This document shows, in pieces, positions 48,698-53,886 of a stretch of DNA of 64,000 bases. A model generated the notes under the pieces. It was not told where the DNA came from and made no database searches. It worked only from the letters and a program-made list of their open reading frames with translations. The position numbers and the translations under genes are program-made. Each line of letters opens with the position of its first letter. Position 1 is the stretch's first letter. This DNA comes from Utricularia gibba (Eukaryota > Plantae > Magnoliophyta). The stretch is from the NCBI GenBank assembly GCA_002189035.1, contig NEEC01000023.1:124001-188000 (forward strand), written 5' to 3'.

Positions 48698-50251
48698 ATG
48701 GCTGTAAGTATTCTATCCCCAACAGTTCTCCATCTATATTTCCATTACTTTGTGTACGAAGTTCATAGTTGAAGCTTTCTGGTTTATGGGTTTTGGTTTT
48801 TAGTTGTTTTTTTGTTGCGATGGTGAATGGATTCAGCGGTTCTTAGAATTTGCTTTCGTGGGTCTTAGTCCTATTCTGGATACTAATTCTTTGTTTACTT
48901 CGAAACCTAGATTCGCGGTTATCGACATAGAGAATAAGCTGTTTCCTGTTAGCTGCTAATGATGAGCTATGGCTGTGTTAACTTCTATATTTGAGCTGTG
49001 TGTAAGAAATCAAGGGTTTATTGATTCACTTTGGGGTAGTTTTGCAACTAAAGAGTGGCTATGAATGAATACCTGAGGATTGTTGCAAAAATTTATATTT
49101 TAAATGTTTGCATATTCAATCAAGATCTTCTTGCTTTGATGGGAATGATGTTTGATCCTTTTCTGTTTTTCTGATACAGAGTTCGAATGTGCCTGAGTTT
49201 GGAAAATGGGATAAAGAAGAAAACGTTCCGTACACAATGTATTTTGATAATGCTCGCAAGACTCGAGGTGGGAAGATCATTAATCCCAGTGATCCACCAT
49301 ATCAGACAGAAATGCAACCGAATGTTACACCAAAGCCAATAACCAAGCACGAGGAATCAGTTGGAGGAGATGGAGATTTCAGGCGTTCTCCTGGCTTTAA
49401 GGATGCTAAGGAGTCGAGTTATGGCCGTCATTCACCTCGGCCTGCTCGCCCTTCAAATGAGATGTCTCCACTTCATCCCCAGCAAGCTCGTTCCCCACGT
49501 CTTGTTGTAGCTCCTGAGTCTCCAGTTCATCATATGCAAGCCCGTTACCCGAAGCCGAATCTGGGAACTTATGAGGGCATTGAGAAGTCTCCTGTTCATC
49601 CACAGCAAATCCGCCATGTCCCACGTGGTGGTACATCTCCTCTCATAGAGGGAAGAGACAGGGATGGTTCCAATGGCCGCAATGGAAGACCCCGACTGTC
49701 TCAGAGCAAGGTAAGGTTGCCATTCATCCCACTTTGCAACTTTGAAACTCCTTTCTAACATCTGCTGGGCACCATTATTCTTCAGAATGATCAAGGGACA
49801 ACTGTTCCACGATTTGGACAATGGAATGATAAGGATCAGCCGACTGAAAACTACAGTAGCATATTCGAGAAAGTTCGAGAGGAGAAGTATTCACTTGCTG
49901 GAACAACTCCAAAGCACTCTTATAACAGTGGCCAAGGCTCTTCCAATGCCAATGAACCTAAGGTTAGTTCTCCAATTTCTGCTTCTGCAAGGTGTGCTTT
50001 ATTTCCAGATGATAACTAGCTTGCTTAGTCTGTGTTGGCTGTTATGTTGCCAACTCTCCTGCTACAGAACTAACCATAAAAACTCGAAACACTCGGTATT
50101 AGTGCTACTCCATAAGGTGATAATCCTATACAAGCAATGCTTTCACCAAGTGTGTGGTAACACCAACATGTGATTTTTCTTACACAAGTATCTGGTTGCT
50201 GAGTTGTGGATTTTGGTGTTGCAGAAAATGTGCGGCTGCTTTCCCTGGTGA
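48698..50251 (+). CDS. RIN4: RPM1-interacting protein 4 (RIN4)/NOI-family protein, 4 exons
   Basis: Exons 48698-48703, 49180-49710, ~49786-49960 and 50225-50251. N-NOI VPEFGKW...[22 protein letters not shown]...[12 protein letters not shown], and C-terminal acylation motif MCGCFPW*. Confidence 0.88.
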
Positions 50252-50830
50252 TTTAAACAGAGCGCGCTGGGGATACGATTCATTTATTCTGAACATATCC
50301 TGTGGTTTGATAAATACCATCAATTGTCTGGTGTTTTGTATTATTTCGTCTCTGTGGGTATGGCATTACTACTAAGACTTGGGATTGCGTTGTTTGCACT
50401 TGAAACTGCTGCCGCTGTACATTGCTCCATAAAAAAGCATTTCTGCATAACCAGTGGCGATTTGCAGTCCTTCGCAGCACAGGGTAAACAGTTTGATTTG
50501 GCAGGGAGGAGACATTTGAAGAGTATAAAAGACATGAAATGCATCCAAGAGAGCTCAACTTTAGCGTTTTCATCAATGGGGAGCAACAGGCTTCTCTTCT
50601 GCCAGAAAATCTTCCAACTCTTCCCCTGTCTGAACAAAAGATACTATTAATGCTTACTCTAAATCATTATCACAATGCGAGCGGATCATTGTTCCAAAAC
50701 AAGGTATGAAATAGAATGATGCACCGATCTATAAAGATCTCACACATGGATTCCTTCCTTGCACCATCCAACCCAACTTCCACAAATATGCATACTGGTA
50801 ACTGGTAAGCTAAAGCAGATAAATATACTA

Positions 50831-51396
50831 GTGAACACATCAGATAACACATAAGTGGAGTGACCGAGTCTGCCTCGCAGAAAATGATATTCTGATGCTC
50901 TTTTGGATTCACGACACATAATACGTCAAGTATGTGAAACGGAATTACAAAAAGCATCATCATTTCAAGAGCCTACCATGCAAAATAATCCTTCGACTGT
51001 CATTTAAAGTAAGTAAAGGATTTGAAAGCTACTTACGCAAAAGCAATATAAACAGACAAGCAGCACCAATTCCAGAGGGTGCCATTGCCAAAATGATCCT
51101 TCGACCGTATATGGAATTCATGTTGCAAAATAAGCCACGTAAATGAAAACTAAATTCTGACAATAAGACATCACATAAGCAGCAGTATTCTCAGAGTATG
51201 CCTTGCACAAATTATCTTCGGATGCCCTTTTGGGTCCATGTGGCAAGAAGGTAAGTTATCAACACTGAATTCCACAAATGTGAATAATGGTAAGTATGAC
51301 AGACATATGGAATTGGGAGAGCAATCAGACAACACAAGAATGTTTTCTGAGAATATCCGTTGCCGCAATAATCCTATGATGCTCTTCCGGATTCAT
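50831..51396 (-). repeat. Degenerate tandem array of five ~60-75 nt related, hairpin-forming units
   Basis: Units A (ATG 51396), B (51239), C (51121), D (51003) and E (GTG 50912) align by eye around ATGAAT-CC-AAAGAGCATC-GAAGGAT[CT]ATTTTGGCAA-GGCA-CTCTG-GAA-TGCTGCTT. They are separated by unrelated spacers. Confidence 0.7.
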
Positions 51397-51481
51397 GCGG
51401 TACAGGCTTCGATTATTAGAAATACCATAGCTTTCGCCAGTGAGAGCAACTCAACATGCTTAAACAAGAGAGGGACAACTA

Positions 51482-51740
51482 TCATTCTGCTCTATCCGCT
51501 TGTGATTCACCCGATTCCGAGATCATCTTCCGTCGATTTCGCGTTTGCCGATCCACCGTCACCATATACAACCCTGTGTCATACATCAACAATCATACAA
51601 AACTAAATACACAGCAGCAATCCCTGATATAATGATATTGCATTTAAAAGCTTCTTACCAACCACACTTCCAAATGCGCACACCCAAAGGATCCTCGACG
51701 ACCATTTATCCGCAACTACTCCTCTGTCCAAAAACCCCAT
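51482..51740 (-). CDS. 57-aa conserved-looking single-pass membrane microprotein, 2 coding exons
   Basis: Exons 51659-51740 and 51482-51573 give MGFLDRGVVADKWSRILWVCAFGSVVGLYMVTVDRQTRNRRKMISESGESQADRAE*, with canonical splice sites. Resembles a recalled small plant family (KW..RILW.CA.GS...LYMV.V.RQ.QNR). A probable 5'UTR exon lies near 52002-52120. Confidence 0.75.
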
Positions 51741-52716
51741 CTTTTATTCTCTGCAATAAATCAAAGTAAACTAAATAACCGTTACACCCATCCCCTGTTA
51801 AATGCTCACCTCCGAAATCAAAGCATTGCAAATAAAATAAACACTATGCAAGTATTTTCAAGAACATTCCCACCCTCCGTACTCACACCATCGAATTCCG
51901 GTGAGTAATGGGATCAAAAACCAGAAAATATACCCAAATTTTGGAATACAAAAAGAAACCCAAATTCACCGATTTCATTGCAGAAGTACATGCGTCAGCT
52001 ACCTTCTCAAGCTTCAACCGGTGTGGCCTCTGCGTCTACGCCTTGAGCAACCCAGAATCCACACGCCAACGCCTCGAGAAGAGGTGCAATCGGTCGTGAA
52101 CCCTAGTCGCACATCGTAGATTACCAACGCATCCTTTGGGACTATAGTCAGGATCAGCCATTATTAAGGCTTGTTGGAACATTTTAGATAAGGATATAAT
52201 TGTAAATTAATAAATATTCGAATTTAAAAGTTTCTTGTGTTAGAGAAAATACTCGCGCGCGTATGCCCTTATAAGCTAGTGTGTCGTGCCTTCGCCGGAG
52301 AAATCAAGACTTGCAAATCCCTGAATGGCGGTTAGGGGGTGGTGTACTGAGAACCTTTTCGAGGTGCACCGCCCACTTCCCCCCAGATAGATGCTTGAGG
52401 ATTCCGTTTCTTATCAGGAGGGTGTTGAGCGATCCATTATTGCTGGTGTGGGGCGTTACGGGTCGTTGCAAGATTTCGTCGTTTTGGTTTTGGTAATTTC
52501 GGTTTTAGGGTTTTTTTGACTGCTTGTTGTTGTTTCTTTTGGTTATGCATACTGATCAGGATGGATTTTTTTTTTCGATTTAGCATTGATAATATGATTT
52601 TTTTTTTTTGTTTTTTGATTCATGATCAGCCTGTTTCTTTTTTCCTTCTAAAGATTGGAGTTTGCGATGTCTTTGATTTCTTTTTCAGGGTATCACGACT
52701 TCCAATTTATTTCATC

Positions 52717-53886
52717 ATGAGTGGCCCGGAGCCAATTCGGAGATATGCAATTCTTAGAAGAAGAAGAAGGTTATTGATAACTGTGGATCTTAATGTCGCA
52801 CCTCCTTGTGAAAGTCGGAGTCAGGAGGGAACCTCGAGTCATGTTAGGCAAGATACACAAGCAACTGTACAACCTCCAATTCATGTAGAGGCATATGACG
52901 ATGATGTTGTTATTGCTTCTCCTAGGGGCTTTGCTGAAGTATTTGCTTATACTATTGCCTTGCTCAGATATTTTTGCATTCATTGATTTTTACATGAGAA
53001 TATTTTTTCAGTCACAAAGGAATCGTAGAGGAACTAGTAGACGTACTCACCCTGTGGTTGATGTGGAATCTGGTATTATTGACTTAGATTGTAGTGAATG
53101 CGCTTGGATATAGTTTTCATATTAAAGCTATGACCCCCCACCAGGCCCCCTGCATCGTGGTTATTTAACCTTTTGGAATTTAAGATGTACGTGTTTGAAC
53201 ACCTTTTTCAGCAGAAAGGGCATCTCACAGCGAACACAGAAGGGACCAAACACTTGTTACTCGTGACTTTTTTTCAATCCTAGAAGTGAGTTCACGAGTA
53301 TGCTCTATTACATTCGTAACAAGGTCCATTTGCTGGTTAAACTTGATAAGCTTGCTTTAATTCCTATCTGTAGCCTTTTTGCCGGTGTGCTTGCGCTTTC
53401 ATTCTGCATGTTGTTAGTTTCTATTCCATCCATAATGTAACGTTAGTTGATTTTCTCCAGGTACTGAATTGTTTATGTCACGGTTTTTGGCTACACCTAA
53501 GATGCGTTAAACTAACATGCGTGGCATTCCTTTTTTTCTTTTTTCATATGGATAGTGTTCTAATGAAGATTTATGACCTTGTATCACATGGAAAGGCCAG
53601 GAATAGTGATCTGTTGGATCATCCACCACCACCACCTCCTCCACCAAGGGTACCAGCATTAAGTTGCCCAATTTGCATGGGTCCGATTGTTGAACCGACA
53701 ACAACAAAGTGCGGTCACATTTTCTGCAATGCTTGCATAAGGACTGCCATAGCTACCCAAGCCAAATGCCCCACCTGCAGGAAAAGATCAAGAAGCAGTG
53801 ATATCATTAGAATTTACCTTCCCAGCCCAAATGCTTCAGGTGCTCGCCCTCTCCGTCACTTCCCTTTTCCCTTGGTGACTGGATAA
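52717..53886 (+). CDS. SUMO-targeted ubiquitin ligase, RNF4/STUbL-like C3HC4 RING
   Basis: SIM-like patches ITVDL, IHVE, DDDVVI and VVDVE; RING CPICM...TTKCGHIFC..CI..AI..QAKCPTCRK; tail DIIRIYLP. The exact 3' end is uncertain. Confidence 0.87.

What the first reader, a model, noticed from the sequence alone, without database searches (positions are those of the whole stretch)
50831..51396. Five diverged hairpin units, each opening with a start codon, downstream of a microprotein gene and facing RIN4
On the minus strand, starting 86 nt after the 57-aa gene's stop, five homologous units occur with unrelated spacers. A: ATGAATCCGGAAGAGCATCATAGGATTATTGCGGCAACGG. B: ATGGACCCAAAAGGGCATCCGAAGATAATTTGTGCAAGG. 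C: ATGAATTCCATATACGGTCGAAGGATCATTTTGGCAATGG. D: ATGACAGTCGAAGGATTATTTTGCATGG. E: GTGAATCCAAAAGAGCATCAGAATATCATTTTCTGCGAGG. Each unit's 3' part can pair with a unit's 5' part, so units fold on themselves (A: AATCCGGA/TCTGATT; E: GTGAA/TTCAC and CATCAGA/TCTGATG). The end of D also pairs with the start of E in an 87-nt pre-miRNA-like stem (50880-50966). A small stem shows a compensatory change (GGTC-GAAG-GATC versus AGTC-GAAG-GATT). The units also encode short ORFs with shared starts (MNPEEHHRII, MDPKGHPKII, VNPKEHQNII; A-D are 23, 22, 30 and 12 aa). All of that is visible in the sequence. Inference: this could be a lineage-specific polycistronic MIRNA/hairpin-RNA cluster, a polycistronic micropeptide array, or a decayed satellite. 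I match it to no conserved miRNA or snoRNA family. It faces the RIN4 3' end, so antisense regulation is conceivable.
Basis: partly seen in the sequence, partly recalled or inferred. Interest (0 to 1): 0.75.

Follow-up and report, generated by a model that had tools for sequence, protein, structure and literature searches.

The report
Old decayed tandem repeat between genes
The five "hairpin units" are real copies of one another, but they are the worn-down remains of an old local tandem duplication lying behind a small conserved membrane-protein gene, and nothing I could test shows that they make regulatory RNAs or peptides, so the locus is ordinary.

Summary
The five units exist as quoted and are far beyond chance: 3 pattern hits against 0 expected, and self-BLAST E-values down to 9e-11. 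They are whole head-to-tail periods of 91-157 nt spanning 50778-51396, not conserved cores separated by unrelated spacers. Core identity is 63%, the rest of the period 53%, and shuffled controls give 41%.

The hairpin-cluster reading fails my tests. Four of five units fold no better than shuffles, RNAalifold finds no consensus pair, the cited compensatory change is not significant, and Rfam has no match. One 87-nt hairpin (50880-50966, z = -4.2) is real. It is specific to the D/E junction and only a moderate outlier in this window.

The peptide reading finds no support. Unit D is frameshifted, unit E lacks an ATG, dN is about 0.4, and no frame stands out.

The 57-aa gene is a genuine, complete member of a conserved plant microprotein family. 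The array therefore lies in its 3' UTR or terminator zone, which is U-rich on that strand, about 530 nt beyond the RIN4 stop codon.

Best reading: a neutrally decaying tandem duplication. Interest is low.

The parts
50778..51396 (-). Whole tandem array. In + strand order it reads X1-E-D-C-B-X2-A. There are five head-to-tail periods of 118, 91, 118, 118 and 157 nt.
   Evidence: Self-BLAST alignments 50952-51157~51058-51272, 50839-50953~51163-51278 and 50778-50911~51270-51395. Alignments A1 and A2. Period alignment.
51240..51396 (-). Unit A. The core is 51357-51396. This period is longer because it carries module X2 at 51270-51293. It has weak self-hairpin potential.
   Evidence: Fold z = -2.1.
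51122..51239 (-). Unit B. The core is 51201-51239.
   Evidence: Fold z = -0.05.
51004..51121 (-). Unit C. The core is 51082-51121. It is the closest relative of unit D, at 73% identity.
   Evidence: Fold z = +0.16.
50913..51003 (-). Unit D. The core is 50976-51003. A 10-nt deletion removes the start of the core and shifts the ORF frame.
   Evidence: Fold z = +1.6.
50795..50912 (-). Unit E. The core is 50873-50912. It starts with GTG rather than ATG, and module X1 (50778-50801) lies at its far end.
   Evidence: Fold z = -0.34.
50880..50966 (.). An 87-nt imperfect hairpin formed by the tail of unit D and the core of unit E. It folds equally well on either strand.
   Evidence: -24.3 kcal/mol with z = -4.2 on the minus strand, and -23.3 with z = -4.3 on the plus strand. 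Inverted repeat I1, 26 nt, 73% complementary. Among the top 0.36% of GC-matched 87-nt windows in the window, while 6% of all windows fold as well in absolute energy.
51659..51740 (-). Exon 1 of the microprotein gene (ATG at 51740, donor GTAAGA at 51658).
   Evidence: Read from the sequence. 14 relatives with E below 1e-3 among 1.84 billion representatives. Aligns to the family N-terminus.
51482..51573 (-). Exon 2 of the microprotein gene, including the stop codon at 51484-51482.
   Evidence: Aligns to the family C-terminal half through to the family's natural end. The acceptor CACAG is read from the sequence.
50225..50251 (+). Last coding exon of RIN4 (KMCGCFPW plus the stop codon), the convergent neighbour.
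   Evidence: Read from the sequence. RIN4/NOI identity comes from exon 3 (49786-49962), which hits PF05627 at E = 4e-12.

Best explanation
The array is the remnant of several rounds of local tandem duplication of a non-coding segment of roughly 120 nt. It lies in the zone between two convergent genes. It starts 86 nt after the stop codon of a complete, conserved 57-aa membrane-microprotein gene, so at least unit A probably sits in that gene's 3' UTR and the rest in its 3' UTR or terminator region.

The copies have since drifted to about 50-70% identity over their whole length. The shared ATG, the short ORFs and the partial self-complementarity are features inherited from the ancestral unit, which may itself have been a short foldback. 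They are not maintained functions. The one good hairpin, at 50880-50966, is a by-product of the tail of one copy lying next to the core of the next.

Shown here: the repeat structure, whole-period homology, absence of conserved structure, absence of a coding signal, completeness of the microprotein ORF, and the strand composition. Inferred: neutrality, and membership of the 3' UTR. No expression data could be reached.
For: - Whole-period homology: BLAST alignments of 120-223 nt at 64-68% identity.
- Core identity is 63%, the rest of the period 53%, and shuffled controls 41 +/- 3%.
- Pairwise unit identities are 47-73%.
- Fold z-scores for the units are -2.1, -0.05, +0.16, +1.6 and -0.34.
- RNAalifold predicts zero consensus pairs.
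- The mini-stem covariation is not significant, with 111 of 500 shuffles reaching it.
- No Rfam family matches at gathering scores, and only chance-level hits appear at E up to 10. No tRNA is found.
- Differences by codon position are 6/6/11. dN is 0.34-0.41 in the ATG frame, with similar ratios in the other five frames.
- Both microprotein exons align over the full length of a conserved 57-63-aa plant family, so no coding exon is missing downstream.
- AT skew flips near 50430-50450. The stretch 50450-51480 is U-rich on the minus strand, as plant 3' UTRs and terminators are.
- No 21-mer of the array has 3 or fewer mismatches elsewhere in the window on either strand.
Against: - Homology is still detectable at an estimated 0.4-0.5 substitutions per site in what is probably a very compact, deletion-prone genome. 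That could hint at some constraint.
- The core is somewhat better conserved than the rest (63% against 53%).
- Four of five units keep an ATG at the same place.
- The hairpin at 50880-50966 is unusual for its GC content (top 0.36%). One placement of a 21-nt duplex on it would meet the structural MIRNA criteria.
- No expression, small-RNA or cross-species data could be examined, so neutrality is inferred and not shown.
Confidence: 0.6

Rival explanations
1. The repeated modules act as cis-elements in the microprotein mRNA's 3' end. They could be tandem alternative polyadenylation signals or repeated protein-binding sites.
For: The array starts 86 nt after the stop codon of a complete ORF. It is G+U-rich on the gene's strand. 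Each period carries a U/G-rich tail and an AUGAAU/AUUAUU-type A/U motif that is invariant in part (TC..A..AT.ATT).
Against: The motifs are short and generic for A/T-rich plant DNA. The core is only 63% identical. No poly(A)-site or binding data are available. Nothing separates this reading from inheritance by descent.
Confidence: 0.14
2. The array is a lineage-specific hairpin-RNA or young MIRNA locus. The ancestral unit was a foldback of about 80 nt, and at least the 50880-50966 hairpin is still cut by Dicer.
For: The hairpin has z = -4.2 and lies in the top 0.36% of GC-matched windows. In units A and E, tail segments are imperfect inverted copies of their own cores. The paper states that 21-nt small RNAs are the dominant class in Utricularia gibba (PMC8333044).
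Against: - Four of five units fold like shuffles, there is no consensus structure, and there is no Rfam hit.
- The strong hairpin is not repeated at other unit junctions.
- In absolute energy, 6% of all 87-nt windows fold as well.
- The base of the stem has a 5-nt asymmetric bulge.
- There is no complementary target in 64 kb.
- 10-mers tiling both hairpin arms are absent from the published U. gibba miRNA list. They are also absent from the stored, truncated ShortStack table. This counts only if the species lead is right.
Confidence: 0.09
3. On the + strand the units are duplicated short non-coding exons of an antisense or read-through transcript. Each period keeps an acceptor-like pyrimidine-run-AG and a donor-like GTAAG.
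For: An AG is aligned in all five periods, and GTAAG, GTAAAT or GTATGT lies 3-25 nt after each core on the + strand (read). There are four GTAAG on the + strand within the 620-nt array; from base composition I reckon about 0.7 would be expected.
Against: - The + strand is A-rich and U-poor across the array (AT skew +0.1 to +0.33), unlike plant introns.
- No reading frame is consistently open.
- The signals are inherited copies of each other and so are not independent.
- RIN4 is complete upstream, and the next + strand gene lies beyond the microprotein gene.
Confidence: 0.08
4. The array is a polycistronic micropeptide locus, with tandem small ORFs that share an MNPxxHxxII start and are all translated.
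For: Four units keep an ATG at the same place. Three share the M/V-N/D-P-x-x-H-x-x-I-I motif.
Against: - Unit D is frameshifted and unit E has GTG.
- ORF lengths of 12-30 aa are what random sequence of this composition gives.
- dN is 0.34-0.41, and the dN/dS ratios are no better than in the other five frames. Variable columns by codon position are 3/3/5.
- The ORFs lie downstream of a complete ORF on the same strand, which scanning ribosomes rarely reach.
Confidence: 0.03

Closest known systems
Minisatellite-like tandem duplications in plant intergenic and 3' UTR DNA
   Same: Head-to-tail copies, a period of about 90-160 nt, homology over the whole period, stepwise duplication history (C-D 73%, B-E 61%, A-B 61%), and indels between copies.
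   Different: The array is very old and diverged, at 47-73% identity. Tandem Repeats Finder does not detect it. The ancestral unit may have carried a short inverted repeat.
Polycistronic plant MIRNA clusters (for example tandem MIR395, MIR166, MIR156/157 hairpins)
   Same: Several homologous units in one orientation at spacings of about 100-150 nt, and one hairpin of pre-miRNA size.
   Different: No stem-loop is conserved across the units, there is no covariation, there is no known family, four of five units are unstructured, and no target was found.
Polycistronic smORF genes such as Drosophila tarsal-less/polished rice
   Same: Tandem short ORFs that open with a shared short peptide motif.
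   Different: The motif is not kept in all copies, there is no frame-specific constraint, and the ORFs lie 3' of another complete ORF. No plant counterpart of this kind is known to me (own knowledge).
Plant polycistronic C/D-box snoRNA clusters
   Same: Tandem units of about 100 nt in a compact intergenic region. One perfect C-box-like AUGAUGA occurs in the tail of unit D.
   Different: No D box sits next to a terminal stem. The only Rfam hit is SNORD111 at 17.8 bits against a gathering score of 46, with E = 8.5. The C-box-like motif is not repeated in the other units.
Convergent cis-natural antisense gene pairs
   Same: RIN4 and the microprotein gene converge, with 1.2 kb between their stop codons.
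   Different: Transcript overlap is not shown. The strand-composition flip at about 50440 suggests the two units end without needing to overlap.

Membership tests
Plant MIRNA locus (Axtell and Meyers 2018 criteria, from my own knowledge) | A single-stem foldback whose miRNA/miRNA* duplex has at most 5 mismatches, of which at most 3 are in asymmetric bulges | tested here: inconclusive
   Only 50880-50966 qualifies as a foldback. A duplex at the base of the stem spans a 5-nt asymmetric bulge and fails. A duplex placed higher on the stem would pass. The five units themselves do not form such foldbacks.
Plant MIRNA locus (Axtell and Meyers 2018 criteria, from my own knowledge) | Precise miR/miR* small-RNA stacks in sRNA-seq | not testable with these tools
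   No read data could be reached. Hairpin-arm 10-mers are absent from the published U. gibba miRNA table and from the truncated ShortStack table, which is weak evidence and depends on the species lead.
Polycistronic hairpin-RNA cluster of homologous units | A stem-loop conserved across the units, ideally with compensatory changes | tested here: not met
   RNAalifold predicts 0 pairs. Unit z-scores are -2.1 to +1.6. The single compensatory pair is reached by 111 of 500 shuffles.
Known RNA family (Rfam 15) | A covariance-model match at the gathering score | tested here: not met
   There are 0 matches in the whole window. In 50300-52000 the best hits have E = 0.23-8.5 and lie far below the gathering scores.
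C/D-box snoRNA | A C box (RUGAUGA) and a D box (CUGA) brought together by a terminal stem | tested here: not met
   There is one C-box-like AUGAUGA at about 50955-50961 (minus strand) without an adjacent D box. The SNORD111 hit scores 17.8 bits against a gathering score of 46. Read from the sequence.
Polycistronic micropeptide (smORF) gene | A start codon and open frame kept in all copies, with frame-specific purifying selection on a shared peptide | tested here: not met
   Unit D is frameshifted and unit E starts with GTG. dN is 0.34-0.41, and no frame stands out among the six. The test has low power, with about 12 codons.
Tandem repeat / local tandem duplication | Head-to-tail copies that are homologous over the whole period, beyond chance | tested here: met
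   Self-BLAST E = 9e-11, 9e-8 and 2.5e-7. Overall identity is 56% against 41 +/- 3% for shuffled controls.
Dispersed repeat / transposon fragment | Further copies elsewhere in the genome, with terminal repeats or target-site duplications | tested here: inconclusive
   There is no other copy in the 64-kb window. The rest of the genome could not be searched. No convincing terminal inverted repeat was found.
Conserved plant 57-63-aa single-pass membrane microprotein (no Pfam family) - the neighbouring gene | Full-length similarity to family members, including the N-terminal G-x-x-DKWS-x-R-ILW motif and the YMV-x-V-E/D-RQ-x-x-NR motif | tested here: met
   phmmer on the exon-1 ORF gives 14 hits with E from 3e-7 to 1e-3. 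Both exons align, and the intron falls at the site where P0008 carries an insertion that looks like a retained intron. The exons were searched and aligned separately. The joined protein was not built.
RIN4/NOI - the facing gene | AvrRpt-cleavage (NOI) domain(s) and a C-terminal Cys-rich anchor | tested here: met
   Exon 3 hits PF05627 at E = 4e-12. The N-terminal NOI scores 16.5 bits, below the 20.3 cut-off. The C-terminus reads KMCGCFPW.

The most novel reading that the evidence does not exclude
The ancestral unit was a foldback of about 80 nt. On this reading the array is a decaying, lineage-specific hairpin-RNA nursery in the 3' region of a conserved microprotein gene. One hairpin (50880-50966) would still be processed into 21-nt small RNAs, which would make it a newly born MIRNA created by tandem duplication instead of by inverted gene duplication or a MITE.
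Probability: 0.07. Interest if true: 0.45.

Novelty: new member of a known kind. Interest (0 to 1): 0.15.

Why it matters
As it stands it matters little. It is one more old tandem duplication in non-coding DNA between two genes.

Two things have modest value. First, it shows how a decayed repeat can imitate a cluster of hairpins or small ORFs, because start codons, short frames and partial self-complementarity are all inherited together from one ancestral unit. Second, the neighbouring 57-aa gene belongs to a conserved but unnamed family of plant membrane microproteins.

If small-RNA data showed precise processing of the 50880-50966 hairpin, the locus would become a case of MIRNA birth from a tandem repeat.

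Tried and rejected
- **Rfam.** The whole window at gathering scores gave nothing. The region at E up to 10 gave only chance-level hits: psbT-asRNA, SNORD111 and OppA thermometer.
- **ARAGORN.** No tRNA or SINE-like head.
- **Tandem Repeats Finder.** It misses the array, which is too diverged.
- **Units as copies of microprotein exon 2** (shared CGGAAGA..ATC). Local alignment scores are at shuffle level, with 98-198 of 300 shuffles as good. Rejected.
- **A paralogous copy at 23.2-23.4 kb.** Two weak collinear BLAST hits (E = 0.017 and 17) lie in an A/T-rich intron of an RRM gene and show no unit structure. Taken as chance.
- **Spliced + strand exons.** Disfavoured by the A-rich composition of the + strand.
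- **Word search for the microprotein** using the exon-1 ORF: no candidates. The 36-aa exon-2 ORF was too short for that tool and for the search for related loci.
- **ESM Atlas on exon 1:** no usable hit.
- **Pfam on the microprotein and its relatives:** nothing.
- **Metagenome scans** with RIN4 exon 2 and with a 22-base core pattern: both blank.
No public transcript, read-derived contig or orthologous locus could be fetched.
- **Published U. gibba sRNA tables:** no match to the hairpin arms. The large table is truncated as stored, and the species assignment is only a lead.
- **Joined protein.** The spliced 57-aa protein was never joined. The exons were searched and aligned separately by reference.

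Full report
**What is there**

They start at 51396 (A), 51239 (B), 51121 (C), 51003 (D) and 50912 (E). A degenerate core pattern finds three copies in the 64-kb window where none is expected in 100 shuffles. A sensitive self-BLAST of 50200-52300 gives three long alignments:
- 50952-51157 with 51058-51272: 223 columns, 64% identity, E = 9e-11.
- 50839-50953 with 51163-51278: 68% identity, E = 9e-8.
- 50778-50911 with 51270-51395: 64% identity, E = 2.5e-7.

The repeat is therefore real, and homology covers whole periods of 157, 118, 118, 91 and 118 nt.

A further module X (50778-50801 and 51270-51293, 88% identical) sits beyond E and between B and A. This explains A's longer period and moves the array boundary to 50778.

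Tandem Repeats Finder does not see the array because it is too diverged. No other copy exists in the window.

**Conserved cores or whole-period decay?**

In a MAFFT alignment of the full periods, pairwise identities are 47-73%, with C-D the closest pair. The 40-nt core is 63% identical. The rest of the period is 53% identical. The same sequences shuffled and realigned give 41 +/- 3%.

The spacers are therefore homologous too, and the core is only modestly better kept. The picture of conserved units separated by unrelated spacers does not hold.

**Hairpins**

Folded singly, the units give z-scores of -2.1 (A), -0.05 (B), +0.16 (C), +1.6 (D) and -0.34 (E) on the minus strand. The plus strand is no better.

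RNAalifold on the aligned units predicts no consensus pair at all. The 4-bp mini-stem has one pair with a double change, G:C in unit C and A:U in unit D. Three of five units do not pair there, and 111 of 500 column shuffles do as well.

Rfam gives nothing at gathering scores for the whole window. For the region it gives only chance-level hits. These include a SNORD111-like alignment at 17.8 bits, against a gathering score of 46, that has a C-box-like AUGAUGA but no D box. ARAGORN finds nothing.

The one good structure is the 87-nt hairpin at 50880-50966, at -24.3 kcal/mol with z = -4.2 on either strand. It is formed by the tail of D and the core of E, and the same pairing does not recur at the other junctions. 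Against all 87-nt windows of the 64 kb, it lies in the top 0.36% of windows with 30-38% GC. In absolute energy, 6% of all windows fold as well. It is a moderate outlier that was picked after the fact.

The tails of A and E are imperfect inverted copies of their own cores. The ancestral unit may therefore have been a short foldback. If so, that property has decayed in B, C and D, which is what drift predicts and selection does not.

No 21-mer of the array matches any other place in the window, on either strand, with three or fewer mismatches. There is no local target, and RIN4 is not one.

**Peptides**

D's frame is shifted by a 10-nt deletion, and E begins with GTG.

Among A, B and E, differences fall 6/6/11 on the three codon positions, and variable columns fall 3/3/5. 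Nei-Gojobori dN is 0.34-0.41 in the ATG frame. The dN/dS ratios are no better than in the other five frames.

The test has little power, with about 12 codons, but it gives no support. The ORFs also lie downstream of a complete ORF on the same strand.

**Context**

*The 57-aa gene.* I treated its two exons separately (51740-51659 and 51573-51482) and never joined them.

The word search found nothing, and Pfam found nothing. A full HMMER scan of 1.84 billion representatives with the exon-1 ORF found 14 relatives with E from 3e-7 to 1e-3.

Several of these are plant proteins of 57-63 aa. Examples are P0012, and the C-terminal parts of Cuscuta australis RAL39082.1 and Anisodus KAJ8567870.1. Both of my exons align over the whole family length, up to its natural end. 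The intron falls where P0008 carries an insertion that looks like a retained intron.

The gene is therefore genuine and complete, and the array begins 86 nt after its stop codon. The family has no Pfam model. ESM Atlas places it in two Streptophyta clusters of hypothetical proteins. It has only weak resemblance (0.85-0.88) to small mitochondrial assembly factors such as PET117 and SMIM20, which is a lead only.

*RIN4.* RIN4 on the + strand has these exons:
- 48698-48703.
- 49180-49710.
- 49786-49962, which hits PF05627 at E = 4e-12.
- 50225-50251, ending KMCGCFPW-stop.

*Strand composition.* AT skew on the + strand is negative over 50125-50500 and positive from about 50440 to 51480. RIN4's U-rich 3' UTR therefore seems to end near 50440. 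The next 1 kb, array included, is U-rich on the microprotein's strand. That fits a 3' UTR or terminator of that gene. It speaks against efficient + strand splicing, even though each period keeps an acceptor-like AG and a donor-like GTAAG on the + strand.

**Origin**

The units do not derive from microprotein exon 2. Local alignment scores are at shuffle level. Two weak hits at 23.2-23.4 kb lie in an A/T-rich intron and look like chance.

**Species and outside data**

Earlier notes of this scan name the genome as Utricularia gibba and call it a fast-evolving plant of the mint order. I did not verify this.

In the published U. gibba small-RNA study (PMC8333044), ShortStack found 80 miRNA loci, nearly all from conserved families. 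Twelve 10-mers tiling both arms of the hairpin on both strands are absent from its miRNA table and from the stored part of its locus table. That table is truncated as stored, so this is weak evidence.

I could therefore reach no transcripts, read-derived contigs or orthologous loci, and expression remains untested.

**Verdict**

The best reading, at about 0.6, is an old, neutrally decaying tandem duplication in the 3' UTR or terminator zone of a conserved microprotein gene.

Four rivals remain:
- Repeated 3'-end cis-elements: 0.14.
- A residual hairpin-RNA or young MIRNA at 50880-50966: 0.09.
- Duplicated antisense exons: 0.08.
- A micropeptide array: 0.03.

None of them has positive support.

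Noticed in passing
window 51482-51740 (minus strand): The 57-aa gene belongs to a conserved plant family of 57-63-aa single-pass membrane proteins that has no Pfam model. Its motifs are G-x-x-DKWS-x-R-ILW-x-CA-x-GSA and YMV-x-V-E/D-RQ-x-x-NR. Public records are 'hypothetical protein', and several are mis-extended or read into the intron (P0002, P0004, P0005, P0008). The Atlas gives weak resemblance to small mitochondrial assembly factors (PET117, SMIM20).
   Followed up: partly
window 50430-50450: The + strand AT skew changes sign here, roughly 190 nt after the RIN4 stop codon. This probably marks the boundary between the two convergent transcription units.
   Followed up: partly
window 50575-50640 (minus strand): A strong acceptor-like site (TCTTTTGTTCAG) is followed by a short open frame, TGEELEDFLAEEKPVAPH-stop. 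It might be a downstream exon of a minus-strand transcript, or it might be chance. It overlaps the presumed end of the RIN4 3' region.
   Followed up: no
window 51591-51634 and 51759-51804: The sequences just upstream of microprotein exon 2 and exon 1 resemble each other (TATTTAGTTT... then a pyrimidine run and CAG; 73% over 48 nt, E = 0.69). Exon 1 is preceded by an acceptor-like TTATTGCAG, which suggests a 5' UTR intron.
   Followed up: no
window 49180-49302 (+ strand): The N-terminal NOI motif of this RIN4 (VPEFGKWD...) scores only 16.5 bits against PF05627, below the 20.3 cut-off. The C-terminal NOI scores 45.7 bits. The middle of the protein carries repeated SP-x-HP motifs.
   Followed up: partly
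window 52516-53886 (+ strand): A RING-finger gene (CPICMGPIVEPTTTKCGHIFCNACIRTAIATQAKCPTCRK) lies downstream. It appears to be transcribed divergently from the microprotein gene, so the two probably share a short promoter region around 51.8-52.6 kb.
   Followed up: no
protein P0001: The top-scoring hit is a 262-aa protein built of five tandem copies of a roughly 52-aa unit. It matches only the hydrophobic W-x-C-x-x-GSAV stretch and probably reflects composition, not kinship.
   Followed up: no
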